From Botryllus schlosseri (Eukaryota), in the NCBI GenBank assembly GCA_051294905.1, contig CM119374.1, positions 8,432,001 to 8,496,000 of the forward strand: 64,000 nt of DNA, given 5' to 3'. Position 1 is the first letter of the stretch. Each line of letters begins with the position of its first letter. A program made the translations under genes and the position numbers. Below the pieces are notes generated by a model. It searched no databases. It was not told the DNA's origin and saw only the letters and a list, made by a program, of their open reading frames with translations. Below, piece after piece: positions 27,373-33,734 of this stretch.

Positions 27373-27394
27373 TGGAGTATTTGGTTGTATTAAG
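27373..27394 (+). other. Spliced-leader sequence at the 5' end of the Tx1 element
   Basis: TGGAGTATTTGGTTGTATTAAG followed by GT matches 22 of the 24 nt of the stolidobranch SL as I recall it. The motif recurs at 32899 and 32955. Confidence 0.7.
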
Positions 27395-28007
27395 GTTCGC
27401 GTAAGTATATAACGGCTATTTACAGGAGCAAGGAACGAACCGGAGCCGCTGTGGCGATAGTTTATACTTACCGTAAACGTTAGTTAATTTTGCAGTACCT
27501 AGGCTAGAATTTTCACTTAGGCTATTTTTCTCCTTCATATTTTCTCCTTTTCATCGACGGATTTCTACTTCTACTTCGGGTCTCCTTCAGACTCAAACCT
27601 CCTCCCTCCTTGGGCCTGACTCGTCTTCGTGAGTCAGGTCTAAAGGAGTCTGTTCCTACCTCCACTAGAGTTTGACTCGTCTTCGTGAGTCAACTCTAGT
27701 CGGAGTCTTTTCTCTTCAAGTCTTGACTCTCTCTCTCGAGTCAAGACTTGTCGAGTCTTTTCTTCTCTCTCGCGCCTCTCCCTTGGGCGACGAGAGACTG
27801 TCTAGCCTTAATTAACAACACGCTACGACACTGTCTAGACAGTGATCGTACGATCTTCCTGCTGTACTGAAACTGCAGTGTCGCCTTTAGCAAAGCGCGC
27901 AGAAAACGCCTCCAAAAACGCTCTATTAAGCGACAGTACAGCTTCGAATTAAAAAGAACGCAGTCTGTAGGCTAGCCCTCAAGCAACAGCAACTTGGCAA
28001 TACACAG

Positions 28008-29255
28008 ATGGCGTACGCAAGTGCACTACTAAACCAAAACAGAAACAGAATAACATATGGCTACAGGCCGCGATCCCTGGATATAGCTGCACCTCTAGGA
28101 AGCAATGCGGTAGACATCATTGACGCAATAACCAAACATCCACTCTTGAAAGAACGAAAGGATACAATAGAATCCATCTTCCAAATAGGAAGATCAACCT
28201 TCAACCTTACCTTCCATACAGAATCCCCTGTAGAAAGCCTGTTAGAAACCTTCCTTCAAGCTACCGAAGAAGGCATAGCAACAGCCACCGGCACATTGCA
28301 CCTTCATAAACCACAATTACCAGCGGTGCAAATCAACATAAGGGCTGTGCCGACAGAAGTAGACAACGAAGAAATAGAGCAAACAATCAACAGGCTTGGA
28401 TGCGGTACAATAAGAACAATCAAACACATCTACCACAGGGGAACCCAAATACACAATGGATACAGACAGGTAACCATCGATAGATACGTGCCTGGGAAAA
28501 TACCACCCTTCCTATATTTAGGCAGAGCGCCCTGCAAGATCTACCTACCTGCAGCCGAAGAGATAAACAGATGTTACAGATGTCTGAGAACAGGGTATAC
28601 CGCAGCAGACTGTCCAAATGAAACGGCCTGCCTACTCTGCAAAGAATACGGCCATAAAAGAGACCAATGTCCAAAAAACAGAAGTCCAGAGGATGAAATG
28701 CAGCTCTCCAACACAAACCCAGGGGAAGAACAAACACAGCCTGAAAATGAACAACAACAACAAACACAGAGCCAACCACCTATAGATAGCCAAAACATCA
28801 TTGAGAACTCTGAGGCCGAGAACTCTGCGGACGAAAAAGAAGATCTACAAGAAGAACCACATGACTTCTTTAACCTAGCAGACAAGACCCCGCCTACACC
28901 AGAAAACTCAGAACTAGATACAACAATAAGACCCGGAGAGGAAACAGAACTCAACAGCGAAAATGAACAAAATAACACAACAGATGAGGAACTGCAAATA
29001 ATAACAAGCGACGAAGAGAAACAACAAGACGCAGAAATAACCCTAACCCAAAAAAAGTCGAAAACAATAAAAAGCCGAACAGGCCAAACGGCAACCATAA
29101 CAAGGAATTGGGAAAGATGAAACTTCACCGCACAGGAATTCTTTAACGCACCCTCACCAAACAAAAGACAACAAAGCGACCGTAGCCCCACGACACAAAA
29201 CGAAAGCTCTGCAAGAAGGAAATTACTGAAAGCAGACATCGAACTGAAAAAGTAG
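28008..29255 (+). CDS. Tx1 ORF1p (RRM-like region, two zinc knuckles, acidic tail); premature TGA at 29118-29120
   Basis: CYRCLRTGYTAADC and CLLCKEYGHKRDQC knuckles. The frame stays open past the TGA to a TAG at 29253-29255, just before ORF2. Confidence 0.85.
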
Positions 29256-29280
29256 CCAGCCCCTGTCCTGTCTAATCCTA

Positions 29281-32200
29281 ATGGCGATGAATATCATATC
29301 CCTAAATGCCAATGGAATGGGAACACATTGGGTAAAAATGAAAAATTTACTCAGATGCGAAAAGAATTGGAATATTATTTGTATCCAAGAAACGCACAGA
29401 GCAGACACAGAGAAAATAGAAAAATGGGCACAACAGAATGACTTACTTTATTATCCAAATCACATTACTGTAGGACAAAATTGGACGGACATGGACGAAA
29501 ACAAAAAACACTACTACAGAGGCACTGGGATATTCGCCAGAAAGGACTTAAAAAATAAATACCACATAAAACACCAGATAGTAAGACAGGACAGGATACA
29601 GACACTACGACTAACCGATAAAGAAACAACCGACATCGCTACCCTATACAATGTGTATGGACCCAGCGATGTCGGAAAATACCAAACTGACTTCTACCGA
29701 GAATTAACATGTCATATAGAAAATAACACCCCTGAGAGCGCGATTATCTGTGGCGACTTTAATGTCGTCACAGATAAGAAAGACTCTAAGAACATCGACA
29801 ATTTCAAACTTACGCCTGCTGCTAAAATATGGAAGACCTTCATAGAAACGAATAAGATCAGAGACATATGGCGTTGGCGAAACCCAAATAAAAAACTATA
29901 TACAGTAATGAAAGCGCATCAATCCCGAAGAGTAGATAGAACCTACGCCTCGGAAAACCTACTCCCGCGGGTGAAAAGAAGCGAATACAAACTCAACAAC
30001 GTAGCTGACCATATATTCATGCAGAAAACACAGGTAGTCGAACCACTGAACATCGCATGGGGAAAACCACTATGGAAAAACGACATCAGACTCTACTCTG
30101 ACGAAACCTTGTACAAAAAAATAAAAATAACCCTTAAAAAATGCGCGAAGAAGAAACATAGCTTTGAAAACGTGTACCAATGGTGGGATTATTTAAAGAA
30201 AGAACTAACCAAACATAGAGGAAAGAAGAAAGATCAACATCCTCAGAGGAAATATAAACCGAATACAAAACAATGTAACTATGGCAGACGAAGCCATAAA
30301 ACAGATAAAGGAACTCAAAAAAGATCGAGAATGACAAACTCTGAGACATAGATGCACGCTTGACAAACTGAGACATAGATGCACGCTTTATAAAATGAGA
30401 GACATAGAGGAGAATGAAAAACCAACGAGATATTTCTTCACAAAAATAGCCCAGCGAAAGCAAAGCAAAATGATTGCAGCAGTTCTAAACCAACGGGGCA
30501 AAGAACTTACAACCAAAGAAGAAATCATCCAAGAGGTTTATGGATTCTACAACAATCTATGGGGGAAATCTCCCAGTGAGAATCCCCGCCTCCAAGAAGA
30601 ATATGCTGCAGAAATTGCGGACATAGAGGCAACCGAACAAGAACGAAAAGACCTCGAAACGCAAATAGACGAGACTGAGATCAAAACGATCCTAAATAAA
30701 ATGGAAAGCGGAAAGACCCCAGGGTCTGACGGGCTCTCCAAAGAATTTTACCAAACCTACTGGTCAATCCTCAAGAAAGACCTACTAGAGGTGATTAATA
30801 ACGCCTACTGCTTTGGAGGCTTGTGTCAAACATGGATGGAGGGCACAACTACCGTAATCTACAAAAAAGGAGAGCCAAAACTTTTAAAAAACTGGAGGCC
30901 AATAACCTTATTAAACACAGATTATAAAATACTAACCAGCATCTTGGCGGCAAGATTGAAACCCATACTCCCAAATTTTATTCTTGGAACACAAAAATGC
31001 GCTATTCGCGGACGACATATAACAGACATACTAAGAAATACTCAGGCAACATTTGAACACGCAACGGAAAGAAAACGAGAACTACTTATTGTAAACTTGG
31101 ACCAGGAAAAAGCTTTTGACACGATTAATCACAAATATCTCTACAGTATACTCGAAAACTACAGACTCCCCAAACCCTTCGTCCAACTGATAAAAAACAT
31201 ATACAACTCCGCAAAAAGCAGAATTCTAGTAAATGGCGCCCTAACAGATCCCATCAACATCAAAAGGGGGATAAGGCAGGGGTGTCCACTGAGCATGTGT
31301 TTATATGCCATCAGCTGTGACCCCCTGGCCAGAAAAATAACGAAAAACGAAAAAATAAGACCTTTCAAAATAGGCAGCGAAAGTATAAAAATACAACAGT
31401 ACGCCGATGATATCACGTGCTACCTTGGGAGAGAGGAGGACATCGATGCCGTATTCGAAGAATTCCAAAAATATGAACGGGCAACCGGGCAAAAATTAAA
31501 TCCAGAAAAAACAGAAATATTGCACATCAATTCGAGAACAGGAGCTAGAACAGGAAAATTCGAGAATCAAAAAAAAGAACGGATTAAAATATTGGGCCAA
31601 TACTTCGGAAAAAACCAATACAATGAAACCTGGACCGAAAACAGACTAAAAATACTACGAACCCTGATGGCCTACAGGCACAGAAAACTGACCTGGATGG
31701 GAAAAAAGGCCATCTTGAACTCCCTGGCAACAACAAAAATTCTGTACAATGCCCGAGTTATACCACCGAGTAAAGAAGATCAAAAAGAACTCGAAAAAAT
31801 ATATTTTAAATTCTTATGGCATCCCCATAAAATGGAGGCAATATCACGAAAAACGCTGATCGCCGAAAGAGAGAAAGGAGGACTCAGAATCCCAGATATA
31901 GAGTCACGCATAAGAGCAATAGAACTCGAAAAAATCGCAACGTTAAAAAATCTGGAAAAACCAACCGAAATATGGCATAAATATGCCATATATGAGGTCG
32001 GAACAAAAATAAAAGCTATACGGCCCAGTCTCTATAACAACAACGAGAGACACAAATATCCTACACCGAAAAGATGGACAGAAAGTATAGACTTGGCGAA
32101 AAAAATCGGATGGGAGGAAGAAGAGTGGAAAGAGAGTTCCCACAAAGAACTGTATAAAGAAATAAAAAATCTCAAAGAAAACGAGATAGAATTCCGAACA

Positions 32201-32740
32201 CAACACGGAAAGAAAATAAAAATGACAAAAATAACCAAAACCAAATGTTTTGGGAAAAACATGATAACTAATAGTGAAATGATCATAAACTATCGAGTAG
32301 CACATGACGGGTATATATTTGGACAGAAAAAAAGAATACGGAACTTAACAGAAGACAAAAATGGCAGGAAATTACTTCTGAACTGCAAATTTTGTAACTC
32401 GAGCAATGATTGCGCAAAACATATATTCACTGAATGCAAATACATCGCAAAATTGAAAAGGAAAATCCAAAAAACGCTAGGACTCGAACTAGACAACGAC
32501 TTAATAATGTACAATACCGGAAGAAAAAAAATCAACTGGATCATTGCATCGATCATGAAAAAGGCGATATTAAACCTGAAGATCGCTCTCGACATTGACA
32601 ATAAAAAAATAGAAAACGAAGGATTGGAGATGAAAATCCTACGAAAAATCAAAAAACGACTAGAAAGCCTAGATAACAACAAACAGGTGACCCAACTAGT
32701 CAAAAAAATAGAGAAAAGACTAGATAGAATAGGAAAATAA
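29281..32740 (+). pseudogene. Tx1 ORF2p (APE endonuclease, RT, C-terminal CCHC), frameshifted near 30240-30395
   Basis: IISLNANG, CIQETH, ICGDFN, RVDRTY, DH; KTPGSDGL, WRPITLLNTDYKIL, DQEKAFD, RQGCPLS, QYADD; CKFCNSSNDCAKHIFTEC. An approximately 27-bp tandem duplication lies at 30341-30395. Confidence 0.93.
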
Positions 32741-32898
32741 TAGCGAAGTGAAAAAAAAGGGCCAAAAAATGGGGGGAAAATGAAGATCAAAAACTCGGAA
32801 AAGACGTGCCACAGAAGAACCAACCTTCTCCTGTGAATGGAAATATCAGGAGGACACAAGACCCACACCCAATGTCAACATAGAGTATCTGAGTTGAG

Positions 32899-32923
32899 AT
32901 TGGAGTATTTGGTTGTAATGAGG
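32899..32923 (+). other. SL-like motif inside the Tx1 3' UTR
   Basis: ATTGGAGTATTTGGTTGTA (19 nt identical to the SL 5' part) followed by ATGAGG instead of TTAAGG. Confidence 0.7.
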
Positions 32924-32924
32924 C

Positions 32925-32955
32925 ACTACGCTTGATCTTAGCCATAAAGGCCGAG
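32925..32955 (-). ncRNA. U2: Antisense fragment of U2 snRNA (about nt 8-37)
   Basis: The reverse complement CTCGGCCTTTATGGCTAAGATCAAGCGTAGT differs from canonical U2 CTCGGCCTTTTGGCTAAGATCAAGTGTAGT by one insertion and one substitution. Confidence 0.88.
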
Positions 32956-33404
32956 GAGTATTTGGTTGTATTAAGGTAAGCATCGGCCTGGCTGATGCGG
33001 AACCCTTGTGGTACAACCGATACTTCCAATCACTTGTACACCTAGGAGAAGTATGGCCGTCAGGCCTTCATGCTCCGCACCGGGATCTGTGTCAGCTTGA
33101 CTGGCCAGTATCCCAGTCACAAGTATGGTGGCGGCGGGACAAGCCTCCGCAGACGCCCCCAGCCAAAGCCTGCTTGTGACAACTGTTTGCACCAACAAGT
33201 GACGAAACTTATTGGAGAAAAAAGCAAACAGGAAGCAACCTTTTGGGAGCTCTTGGGTCCTTTCGACCCAAGAGTGACCTATTAAGGCGCTTGTGGCAAT
33301 AGTCCGGTGGTGTAGTGCCACATGGGCTGCCGCAAGCGTAACGGGGTGGAGGTTTACTGCGGTTCCTCCAGGTTACCCCTAAAAAAAAAAAAAAAAAAAA
33401 AAAA
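32930..33404 (+). mobile_element. 475-bp non-autonomous poly(A) retroelement (SINE-like) with a U2-antisense/SL head
   Basis: Perfect 17-bp TSD TTGTAATGAGGCACTAC (32913-32929, 33405-33421). (A)24 tail. 3' hairpin GTAAC..TGGAGG/CCTCCA..GTTAC. SL GGAGTATTTGGTTGTATTAAG followed by GTAAG at 32955-32980. Confidence 0.88.
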
Positions 33405-33670
33405 TTGTAATGAGGCACTACTGCCCGAAAAGGCGGAAACACAAAAATAAATAAGAGAAAAATAAAGAAGAACCTGTCACACTTGCCTAAGCACTGTTCA
33501 AACCCCTCAGTTAGAAAGGAAAAGGAAAAAAAAATAAAAAATAAAAAAGAAGAACCTCAAAACCCCCAGACCGGAGCAGGCACCTATACCAGATGTAGAG
33601 AGGGCCTGCGATGGTCTGGGTATCCGGAGAGCCGCAAAAAAAAAAAAAAAAAAATATTTATTTCTAGATT

Positions 33671-33691
33671 GTACTCGCTTCGGCGGTACAC

Positions 33692-33727
<36 letters not shown>

Positions 33728-33734
33728 GGCCCCT
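33671..33734 (+). ncRNA. U6: U6 snRNA 5' portion (nt 1-64), interrupted
   Basis: GTACTCGCTTCGGCGGTACACATACTAAAATTGGAACGATACAGAGAAGATTAGCATGGCCCCT includes the ACAGAGA box and compensatory 5' stem changes. I found no U6 3' half in the window. Confidence 0.95.

What the first reader, a model, noticed from the sequence alone, without database searches (positions are those of the whole stretch)
32925..32955. Antisense U2 piece at the 5' junction: target DNA apparently primed on U2 snRNA
Seen: the last 5 nt of the left TSD (ACTAC) are complementary to the U2 branch-recognition GUAGU (nt 33-37). The sequence continues as antisense U2 back to about nt 8, then joins the SL head through one shared G. 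Established: twin priming creates inverted 5' segments in L1 insertions. Inference: the second-strand 3' end primed reverse transcription on a different RNA (U2), which may have been near the SL RNA in a trans-spliceosome.
Basis: partly seen in the sequence, partly recalled or inferred. Interest (0 to 1): 0.72.

Follow-up and report, generated by a model that had tools for sequence, protein, structure and literature searches.

The report
Backwards U2 snippet at retroposon junction
A short jumping element in this sea-squirt genome carries a 25-letter backwards copy of the animal's own U2 splicing RNA at its front junction. It was most likely made when the cut chromosome end primed copying on U2 RNA, a rare by-product already described for human L1 insertions.

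Summary
One 17-bp target-site duplication (32913-32929 = 33405-33421) encloses an antisense U2 piece, a ~425-nt SINE headed by the spliced leader (SL), and 24 A's.

- **U2 match:** 32931-32955 matches a native U2 variant at 25 of 25 positions (nt 8-31).
- **One mismatch:** 32930 is G where U2 predicts A. This form occurs nowhere else in the genome.
- **Microhomology:** the last five bases of the left duplication, ACTAC, complement GUAGU of U2. Uninterrupted sister copies of the host LINE show that ACTAC was target DNA.
- **A second event:** on contig C14 the same architecture occurs without any SINE. It has CTA microhomology, antisense U2 down to nt 8, and a 9-bp duplication.

The best explanation is that the top-strand 3' end primed reverse transcription on a U2 RNA at its branch-point-recognition sequence. 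Doucet et al. 2015 published this model for inverted U5, U1, U2 and U6 pieces joined to L1 or SVA in humans. This is therefore a new member of a known kind.

The trans-spliceosome idea has no support. One point stays open: the matching U2 variant has no intact gene in the assembly. It occurs only in genes disrupted by a Utopia-like LINE, in LINE heads, and in the three isolated pieces (this one, C14, C9).

The parts
27374..33655 (+). Host element: an APE-type (Tx1/L1-like) LINE with an SL head at 27374. It has frameshifted ORF pieces, and its 3'UTR contains an SL-like motif. The tail is poly(A) at about 33636-33655. The composite insertion sits in its 3'UTR.
   Evidence: ORFs 28008-32740 carry Exo_endo_phos and RVT_1 domains. 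SL words are found at 27374, 32902 and 32955. Sister copies are 593/622 identical across the left flank. The 5' limit was not re-measured here.
32913..32929 (+). Left target-site duplication, TTGTAATGAGGCACTAC.
   Evidence: An exact 17-bp repeat of 33405-33421 that does not extend on either side. The empty site is seen in paralogues.
32925..32929 (-). ACTAC: target bases complementary to the U2 branch-point-recognition bases GUAGU (nt 33-37). This is the inferred priming microhomology.
   Evidence: Ungapped alignment to antisense U2. ACTAC is also present in uninterrupted paralogues.
32930..32930 (-). The single mismatch: G where antisense U2 has A (U32). It is either a misincorporation at the first added base or a later A>G change.
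   Evidence: The C32 form of the U2 5' word occurs nowhere else in the genome.
32931..32955 (-). Antisense copy of U2 snRNA nt 8-31, covering all of stem-loop I plus the linker. It is variant A, which has one extra loop base.
   Evidence: 25/25 identical to the C14 U2 5' parts and LINE heads. Rfam U2 aligns here on the minus strand.
32955..33380 (+). SL-headed SINE copy: SL exon from (G)GAGTATTTGG..., then the splice donor AAG|GTAAGC, then the body. It lacks the first 4-5 nt of the SL. The G at 32955 may be shared with the U2 piece.
   Evidence: More than 50 family copies at 84-92% identity, none extending upstream of the head. The SL equals the published tunicate consensus. cDNA reads put the SMART oligo plus GATT directly before 32955.
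33381..33404 (+). Poly(A) tail, 24 A's.
33405..33421 (+). Right target-site duplication.

Best explanation
This is one retrotransposition event that produced a composite insertion. A LINE endonuclease nicked the bottom strand of the SL-like motif in the host LINE's 3'UTR. The SL-headed SINE RNA was then reverse-transcribed from its poly(A) tail.

After the top strand was cut 17 bp downstream, its free 3' end (...CACTAC-3') paired with the exposed branch-point-recognition bases GUAGU of an RNA carrying the variant-A U2 5' region. The reverse transcriptase copied that RNA back through stem-loop I to nt 8. The nascent strand then joined the first cDNA near the SL head, with at most 1 nt of overlap.

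The sequence shows directly the anatomy, the native origin of the piece, the empty site, and the absence of the piece from the family. The priming step, the RNA nature of the template and the order of events are inferred.
For: - **Single event:** one 17-bp target-site duplication encloses piece, SINE and A24. Uninterrupted paralogues prove the pre-insertion sequence and show that ACTAC is target DNA.
- **Native U2:** the piece matches native U2 variant A at 25 of 25 positions, and the match continues through ACTAC with one mismatch.
- **Orientation:** the antisense piece lies on the strand carrying the left duplication. That is what extension of the top-strand 3'-OH on a sense RNA gives.
- **Accessible priming site:** GUAGU lies in the unpaired stretch after stem I in the Rfam consensus.
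- **Not the element head:** 0 of 18 full-length copies inspected carry the piece, and none of more than 50 BLAST-matched copies extends into it.
- **Family habit:** other family copies attach their 5' ends through 2-4 nt microhomologies.
- **Independent second event:** on C14 (L048) the target 3' end CTA is followed by antisense U2 down to nt 8, a shared G and a 9-bp duplication, with empty paralogues and no SINE.
- **Single priming region:** no U2 retro-fragment in the genome extends past nt 37.
- **Published model:** the same mechanism, with the same features, is described for human snRNA/L1 chimeras (PMC4476161).
Against: - The first base after the primer is wrong (G instead of A).
- Variant A has no intact gene in this assembly. 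It is found only in four C14 U2 genes split by a Utopia/YURE-like LINE, in LINE heads that stop at nt 31, and in the three orphans. The two intact U2 genes are variant B. The template may therefore not have been mature U2 snRNA.
- The piece ends 1 nt from the Utopia cleavage site (nt 38|39), which could hint at a link with that element.
- The sequence alone cannot distinguish an RNA template from a DNA template.
- The short k-mer contigs laid on the region did not give a listed record bridging the junction.
Confidence: 0.66

Rival explanations
1. First-strand template jump. After reaching the SINE RNA 5' end, the reverse transcriptase jumped onto the 3' end of a free antisense U2 nucleic acid. 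That could be a U2 cDNA ending near nt 8, like the one that made the C14 orphan, or an antisense transcript. It copied this to nt 37, and the new GTAGT end annealed to the ACTAC overhang of the top strand.
For: It gives the same final sequence. U2 cDNAs spanning nt ~8-37 evidently form in this genome (L048, L047). LINE reverse transcriptases jump between templates, which is the basis of U6/L1 chimeras.
Against: It needs an extra, rare intermediate: a free U2 cDNA present at the right moment. It does not explain the mismatch any better. The published inverted chimeras are explained without it.
Confidence: 0.12
2. DNA-templated filler. During 5'-end repair, the ACTAC 3' end annealed to GTAGT in U2 gene DNA or in a LINE-disrupted U2 copy. 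A repair polymerase extended it for about 26 nt (templated insertion or microhomology-mediated end joining), or a U2 DNA fragment was captured.
For: Variant A exists in the assembly only as DNA of disrupted genes and LINE heads. The piece ends next to the site where the Utopia-like endonuclease cuts U2 genes.
Against: Templated fillers copied in trans from another chromosome are rare compared with the abundance of U2 RNA. LINE heads stop at nt 31 and lack GUAGU, and no LINE sequence accompanies the piece. The C14 orphan has a 9-bp target-site duplication typical of endonuclease-plus-RT insertion.
Confidence: 0.1
3. The template was not U2 snRNA itself but a chimeric transcript started at a variant-A U2 promoter and running into the inserted Utopia-like LINE. 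One such copy exists, with U2 nt 1-37 intact (C14:22196427-22196490). The priming mechanism is otherwise the same as in the best explanation.
For: All three orphan pieces are variant A, while the only intact genes are variant B. Dispersed LINE copies carry U2 heads, so U2-promoter-driven LINE RNAs exist (earlier notes s1-278691 and s1-300885).
Against: Most LINE heads end at nt 31 and so lack the priming site. Intact variant-A genes may have existed at the time, or may be missing from the assembly. Run X1 has an unexplained high depth over the piece.
Confidence: 0.1
4. The U2 piece is part of the element (a subfamily head), was fused before this insertion, or is a chance match.
For: None found.
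Against: No other copy has it. The 25-mer census finds no second antisense-U2/SL junction. The reversed control gives 0 hits. The match extends into the target-site duplication.
Confidence: 0.02

Closest known systems
Inverted snRNA/retrotransposon chimeras made by twin priming on an snRNA (Doucet et al. 2015, Mol Biol Evol 32:1815, PMC4476161)
   Same: - A 3'-truncated snRNA 5' piece lies in the opposite orientation to the retroposon, and both sit inside one target-site duplication.
- There is microhomology between the target and the snRNA at the truncation point.
- The truncation lies in a single-stranded, functionally exposed segment.
- A U2/L1 case is listed there.
   Different: - The host is a tunicate, not a mammal.
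- The partner is a nearly full-length SL-headed SINE rather than a 5'-truncated L1 or SVA.
- The enzyme is not L1 ORF2p, and the target is not TTTT/A-like.
- The priming site is the U2 branch-point-recognition sequence itself.
- The piece lacks nt 1-7.
Classical twin priming of L1 (Ostertag and Kazazian 2001)
   Same: The top-strand 3'-OH is used as a second primer through short complementarity, producing an inverted segment next to the left target-site duplication.
   Different: There the second primer anneals to the same L1 RNA and inverts its own 5' part. Here it anneals to a different RNA.
3'-truncated snRNA pseudogenes, also called tailless retropseudogenes (Denison and Weiner 1982; Schmitz 2004; Group II of Doucet 2015)
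   Same: Internal initiation on an snRNA at a single-stranded stretch, with microhomology and a target-site duplication. The orphan U2 pieces on C14 (L048) and probably C9 (L047) are of this kind and use the same U2 site.
   Different: Those are solitary insertions primed from the first nick. The window piece is attached to another retroposon.
U6/L1 template-switch chimeras (Buzdin 2002; Garcia-Perez 2007, as reviewed in PMC4476161)
   Same: An snRNA sequence lies at the 5' junction of a retroposed copy, within one target-site duplication.
   Different: There the snRNA is in sense orientation, is usually full-length U6, and is added to the first-strand cDNA.
U2-gene-targeting LINEs Utopia/YURE (RLE type) and Keno (APE type) (Kojima and Jurka 2015, PMC4640811)
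   Same: They are the source of most U2 5' sequences in this genome. They are inserted at U2 nt 38|39, next to the end of the window piece, and carry the same variant A.
   Different: There the U2 head is in sense orientation, covers nt 1-31 and is followed by LINE sequence. The window piece is antisense, extends to nt 37 and has no LINE sequence.

Membership tests
Twin-priming snRNA/retroposon chimera (Doucet 2015, Group IV inverted type) | One target-site duplication encloses both the snRNA piece and the retroposon, with a demonstrable empty site. | tested here: met
   17/17 duplication. Uninterrupted paralogues at C12:24439163 and C13:23819169.
Twin-priming snRNA/retroposon chimera (Doucet 2015, Group IV inverted type) | The snRNA piece lies in the opposite transcriptional orientation, at the 5' side of the retroposon. 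| tested here: met
   U2 is on the minus strand and the SINE with its poly(A) is on the plus strand.
Twin-priming snRNA/retroposon chimera (Doucet 2015, Group IV inverted type) | The snRNA is 3'-truncated within a single-stranded segment. | tested here: met
   It ends at nt 37 in the GUAGUA stretch, which is unpaired in the Rfam U2 consensus structure. A thermodynamic fold of the whole U2 did not reproduce the canonical structure and was not used.
Twin-priming snRNA/retroposon chimera (Doucet 2015, Group IV inverted type) | Complementarity between the target 3' end and the snRNA at the junction. | tested here: met
   ACTAC/GUAGU, 5 nt, followed by one mismatch.
Twin-priming snRNA/retroposon chimera (Doucet 2015, Group IV inverted type) | The piece derives from the host's own snRNA and is not part of the retroposon family consensus. 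| tested here: met
   25/25 match to native variant A. Absent from all other copies.
Twin-priming snRNA/retroposon chimera (Doucet 2015, Group IV inverted type) | The template was RNA and the primer was the top-strand 3'-OH. | not testable with these tools
   This needs de novo insertion assays. The sequence is equally compatible with a cDNA or DNA template.
Element head (the piece belongs to the SINE or LINE) | Present in other copies whatever the target. | tested here: not met
   0 of 18 inspected heads carry it, and none of more than 50 matches extends upstream of the SL. There is only one antisense-U2/SL junction in the genome.
Utopia/YURE U2 head | Sense U2 nt 1-31 followed by the LINE 5'UTR. 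The LINE is RLE-type with zinc fingers, RT and CCHC + PD..D, and its 3' junction is at U2 nt 38/39. | tested here: not met
   The C14 LINE itself meets these features (site as in PMC4640811). The window piece is antisense, has no LINE sequence and reaches nt 37.
   No C/D boxes surround 32925-32955 (reading). No Rfam snoRNA hit covers the piece.

The most novel reading that the evidence does not exclude
In this tunicate the U2 branch-point-recognition sequence would be the single recurrent entry point for stray reverse transcription. All three U2 retro-fragments in the genome end at nt 36-37. All three are the variant that survives only in Utopia-disrupted U2 genes. That would mean LINE integration intermediates sample a particular pool of U2-headed RNAs: either spliceosome-engaged U2, or U2-promoter-driven LINE transcripts. 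The events would then be a molecular record of cross-talk between two retroelement families, or between retrotransposition and (trans-)splicing.
Probability: 0.15. Interest if true: 0.55.

Novelty: new member of a known kind. Interest (0 to 1): 0.33.

Why it matters
This is a clean example of second-strand priming on a heterologous snRNA outside mammals. It has a verified empty site, a native-template match and an independent sister event.

It shows that the side reaction described for human L1 also occurs with a different LINE/SINE system in a chordate that trans-splices. It also shows that the exposed GUAGU of U2 can act as a primer-binding site.

The finding does not open a new question. 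It gives a small natural data set (three events) on where nicked DNA ends find RNA partners. It also flags a puzzle: the U2 variant that was used has no intact gene in the assembly.

Tried and rejected
- **Part of the SINE head:** rejected, because the family alignment and 5' flanks of 18 full-length copies lack the piece.
- **Chance match, or match only to human U2:** rejected against native genes. The loop "insertion" is native.
- **A U2 variant with C at nt 32:** none exists in the genome.
- **Intact variant-A U2 genes:** none in the assembly. Only two intact genes exist, both variant B.
- **Two-step origin (orphan first, then SINE, or the reverse):** rejected, because there is one target-site duplication and no second duplication around the piece.
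- **Derivation from Utopia LINE heads:** the heads stop at nt 31 and continue into the LINE 5'UTR, which is absent here.
- **Box C/D guide antisense to U2:** no boxes are present.
- **Thermodynamic fold of native U2:** it did not reproduce the canonical structure, so the Rfam consensus was used instead.
- **Read support:** contigs and reads of four runs were laid on 32700-33600. The contigs are short k-mer pieces in repeats, and none of the listed records bridges the junction, so there is neither independent read confirmation nor evidence of polymorphism. The RNA reads did confirm that the SL begins GATT+GGAG.
- **3' tail shared with the host LINE:** a local BLAST of the SINE against the window found none, so the mobilising LINE stays unidentified.

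Full report
**1. What is there**

Window 32913-32929 and 33405-33421 are an exact 17-bp direct repeat, TTGTAATGAGGCACTAC. It does not extend on either side. Between the two copies lie, in order:
- a single G (32930);
- 25 nt that are the reverse complement of the U2 snRNA 5' region (32931-32955);
- a ~425-nt element that begins with the spliced leader (SL), followed by the donor AAG|GTAAGC (32955/6-33380);
- 24 A's (33381-33404).

The whole unit sits in the 3'UTR of an APE-type LINE. That LINE has ORF pieces with Exo_endo_phos and RVT_1 domains and its own poly(A) at about 33636-33655. Two sister copies of this 3'UTR elsewhere in the genome read straight through the site as ...GGTTGTAATGAGGCACTAC|TGCCCGAAAAGG... 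(C12:24439163 exact, C13:23819169 with 3 differences). The duplicated 17-mer is therefore target DNA, and everything between the repeats arrived together.

**2. Is the U2 match real?**

Yes, and it improves against the native gene.
- Rfam U2 finds two intact genes on C1 (159.7 bits each) and several split genes on C14.
- The intact genes read GGCCCTATGGC in loop I (variant B). The C14 5' parts read GGCCTTTATGGC (variant A).
- The window piece is 25/25 identical to variant A. The "extra" base relative to human U2 is therefore native.
- With up to 2 mismatches the 25-mer occurs 16 times in 495 Mb, and the reversed control occurs 0 times. A looser pattern adds only the two variant-B genes.
- In Rfam (human) numbering the piece covers C8 to G31, that is all of stem-loop I plus the linker. 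Position 32 is mismatched: the window has G where A is expected. The next five bases, ACTAC, complement G33-U37 and belong to the target-site duplication.
- The C32 form of the U2 5' word exists nowhere else in the genome.
- A five-base match in that register has a chance of about 1/1000 (my arithmetic).

**3. Is it part of the element?**

No.
- The element is a family of more than 50 copies at 84-92% identity.
- In 18 full-length copies I read the 5' flanks. They start at (ATT)GGAGTATTTGG directly after their own target-site duplications, often through 2-4 nt of microhomology. None has a U2 piece.
- No BLAST match extends upstream of the head, apart from this locus matching itself.
- The head equals the published tunicate leader GATTGGAGTATTTGGTTGTATTAAG (Bitar et al. 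2013, PMC3795323).
- In a SMART cDNA library, 407 reads place the template-switch oligo plus GATT immediately before 32955 (table 7). The leader is therefore used in vivo, and this copy lacks its first 4-5 nt.
- The U2/SL joint shares at most one G.

**4. Where else is U2 variant A?**

The 16 sites fall into three groups.

(a) Four C14 U2 genes with the U2 promoter. All four are interrupted. In the two full-length cases the interrupting element is about 6.1 kb and encodes one 1500-aa ORF. That ORF has N-terminal zinc fingers, a central RVT_1 domain, and a C-terminal CCHC followed by RPD..D. This is an RLE-type LINE. Its 3' end abuts U2 at nt 38/39, the site described for Utopia, with YURE as the ascidian relative (Kojima and Jurka 2015, PMC4640811). 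Its 5' junctions are at nt 31, and in one case at nt 37.

(b) About eight dispersed copies of that LINE carry sense U2 nt 1 (or 4-8) to 31 as a head. This agrees with earlier notes s1-278691 and s1-300885.

(c) Three orphans: the window piece, L048 (C14:21526188) and L047 (C9:14519083).

No intact variant-A gene exists in the assembly.

**5. A second, independent event**

L048 lies in a repeat whose ten other sampled copies are uninterrupted at that point. Read in the antisense sense, it has:
- a target ending ...GGCTGTCTA;
- antisense U2 from nt 33 down to nt 9/8;
- a shared G;
- a second copy of the 9-bp target, that is a duplication of TAGACAGCC with one later change.

The terminal CTA complements UAG of GUAGU. 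This is the same architecture as the window junction, but with no SINE.

L047 covers nt ~6-36, and I could not define its target-site duplication.

No U2-derived fragment in the genome runs past nt 37. All three fragments therefore end in the branch-point-recognition stretch.

**6. Mechanism**

An antisense piece attached to the left duplication is what results if the top-strand 3'-OH (...CACTAC) is extended on a sense U2 template and then continues on the first-strand cDNA of the SINE. GUAGU lies in the unpaired region after stem I in the Rfam consensus.

This is exactly the model of Doucet et al. 2015 (PMC4476161). In the human genome, seven snRNA copies (U5, U1, U2, U6) are 3'-truncated and inverted relative to an L1 or SVA. 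They lie inside one target-site duplication, show target/snRNA complementarity at the junction, and are truncated in single-stranded functional loops. The authors explain them by twin priming on the snRNA. The solitary L048-type fragments correspond to their 3'-truncated pseudogenes, which arise by internal initiation.

I put 0.66 on this reading. The anatomy is shown. The priming step, the RNA template and the order of steps are inferred.

**7. Rivals**

- **Jump onto antisense U2 (0.12).** A first-strand jump onto a free antisense U2 cDNA, with ACTAC used for joining, gives the same sequence but needs an extra intermediate.
- **DNA-templated filler (0.10).** This is suggested by two facts: variant A is present only as disrupted DNA, and the piece ends 1 nt from the Utopia cut site. 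Against it, LINE heads lack GUAGU, no LINE sequence is attached, and the sister event has an endonuclease-type target-site duplication.
- **Different template (0.10).** The template may have been a U2-promoter-driven U2(1-37)-LINE transcript, such as from C14:22196427-22196490, rather than mature U2.
- **Element head or chance (0.02).**

**8. The trans-spliceosome idea**

Nothing supports it. The C14 event used the same U2 site with no SL element, and the human chimeras involve no SL. It is not excluded, but it is unnecessary.

**9. Loose ends**

- The G at 32930 is unexplained. It could be a misincorporation opposite U32 or a later A>G change.
- Run X1 shows word depth 6654 in the bin 32917-32947, against 52 in run X5. 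This could mean many unassembled U2-like copies or RNA in that run. I could not follow it up because the reads call is capped.
- None of the listed laid records bridges the junction. Support for the junction is therefore the assembly plus its internal logic: the target-site duplication and the empty sites.

**10. Verdict**

The core interpretation is the best available but is already known from mammals. It is a new member of a known kind, of modest interest.

Noticed in passing
L070 (G000:C14:25690900-25697600), L071 (C14:22190800-22196700), L072 (C14:22180200-22182400): All four variant-A U2 genes on C14 are split by an RLE-type LINE with a 1500-aa ORF (zinc fingers, RT, CCHC + RPD..D). Its 3' junction is at U2 nt 38/39, as described for Utopia/YURE. 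Insert sizes are about 6.1 kb (two copies), 5.25 kb and 1.65 kb. Only two intact U2 genes, both variant B on C1, remain in the assembly.
   Followed up: partly
L038, L039, L045, L046, L049, L050, L053 (dispersed loci): Copies of that LINE outside U2 genes still carry sense U2 nt 1 (or 4-8) to 31 as their 5' head. The family therefore seems to be copied from RNAs started at U2 promoters.
   Followed up: partly
L048 (G000:C14:21526188-21526212) and L047 (G000:C9:14519083-14519107): These are orphan U2 5' fragments (nt ~8-33/37 and ~6-36). L048 has a 9-bp target-site duplication, with microhomology at both ends and empty paralogues. Its architecture is the same as the window junction but without a SINE. 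No duplication could be defined for L047.
   Followed up: partly
L020, L025, L027, L030, L033 and tandem arrays in L011, L019, L021, L036, L037: The SL-headed SINE lands repeatedly at GG|T(G/A)AGCATCG. This occurs in an unrelated inverted-repeat element and at the matching site of its own SL-intron start, which produces head-to-tail arrays. The window target, TATTTGG|TTGTAATG in an SL-like motif, shares the GG|T cut. The pattern suggests a sequence-specific endonuclease aimed at SL-like DNA.
   Followed up: no
window 33671-33734: U6 snRNA nt 1-62 (58.9 bits) lies directly after the host LINE's poly(A) and a 15-nt spacer, then breaks off into unrelated sequence. Earlier notes call the downstream part a Dada-U6-like transposon.
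   Followed up: no
L033 (G000:C6:6621320-6621776), 5' flank: One SINE copy is preceded by two extra partial SL heads in tandem (GGAGTATTTG, GAGTATTG, then GAGTACTTGG). This may be slippage or repeated re-priming at the 5' end.
   Followed up: no
window 32917-32947, run X1 against run X5: Summed contig depth over the U2 piece is about 6650 in X1 but about 52 in X5, while the flanking LINE bins are similar in both runs. The cause is unexplained. It could be unassembled U2-like copies or RNA in X1.
   Followed up: no
window 32917/32975, RNA run X23: 19 cDNA reads join the SL-like motif and the SL exon end on opposite strands. These are probably SL-to-SL inverted library artefacts rather than a feature of this locus.
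   Followed up: no
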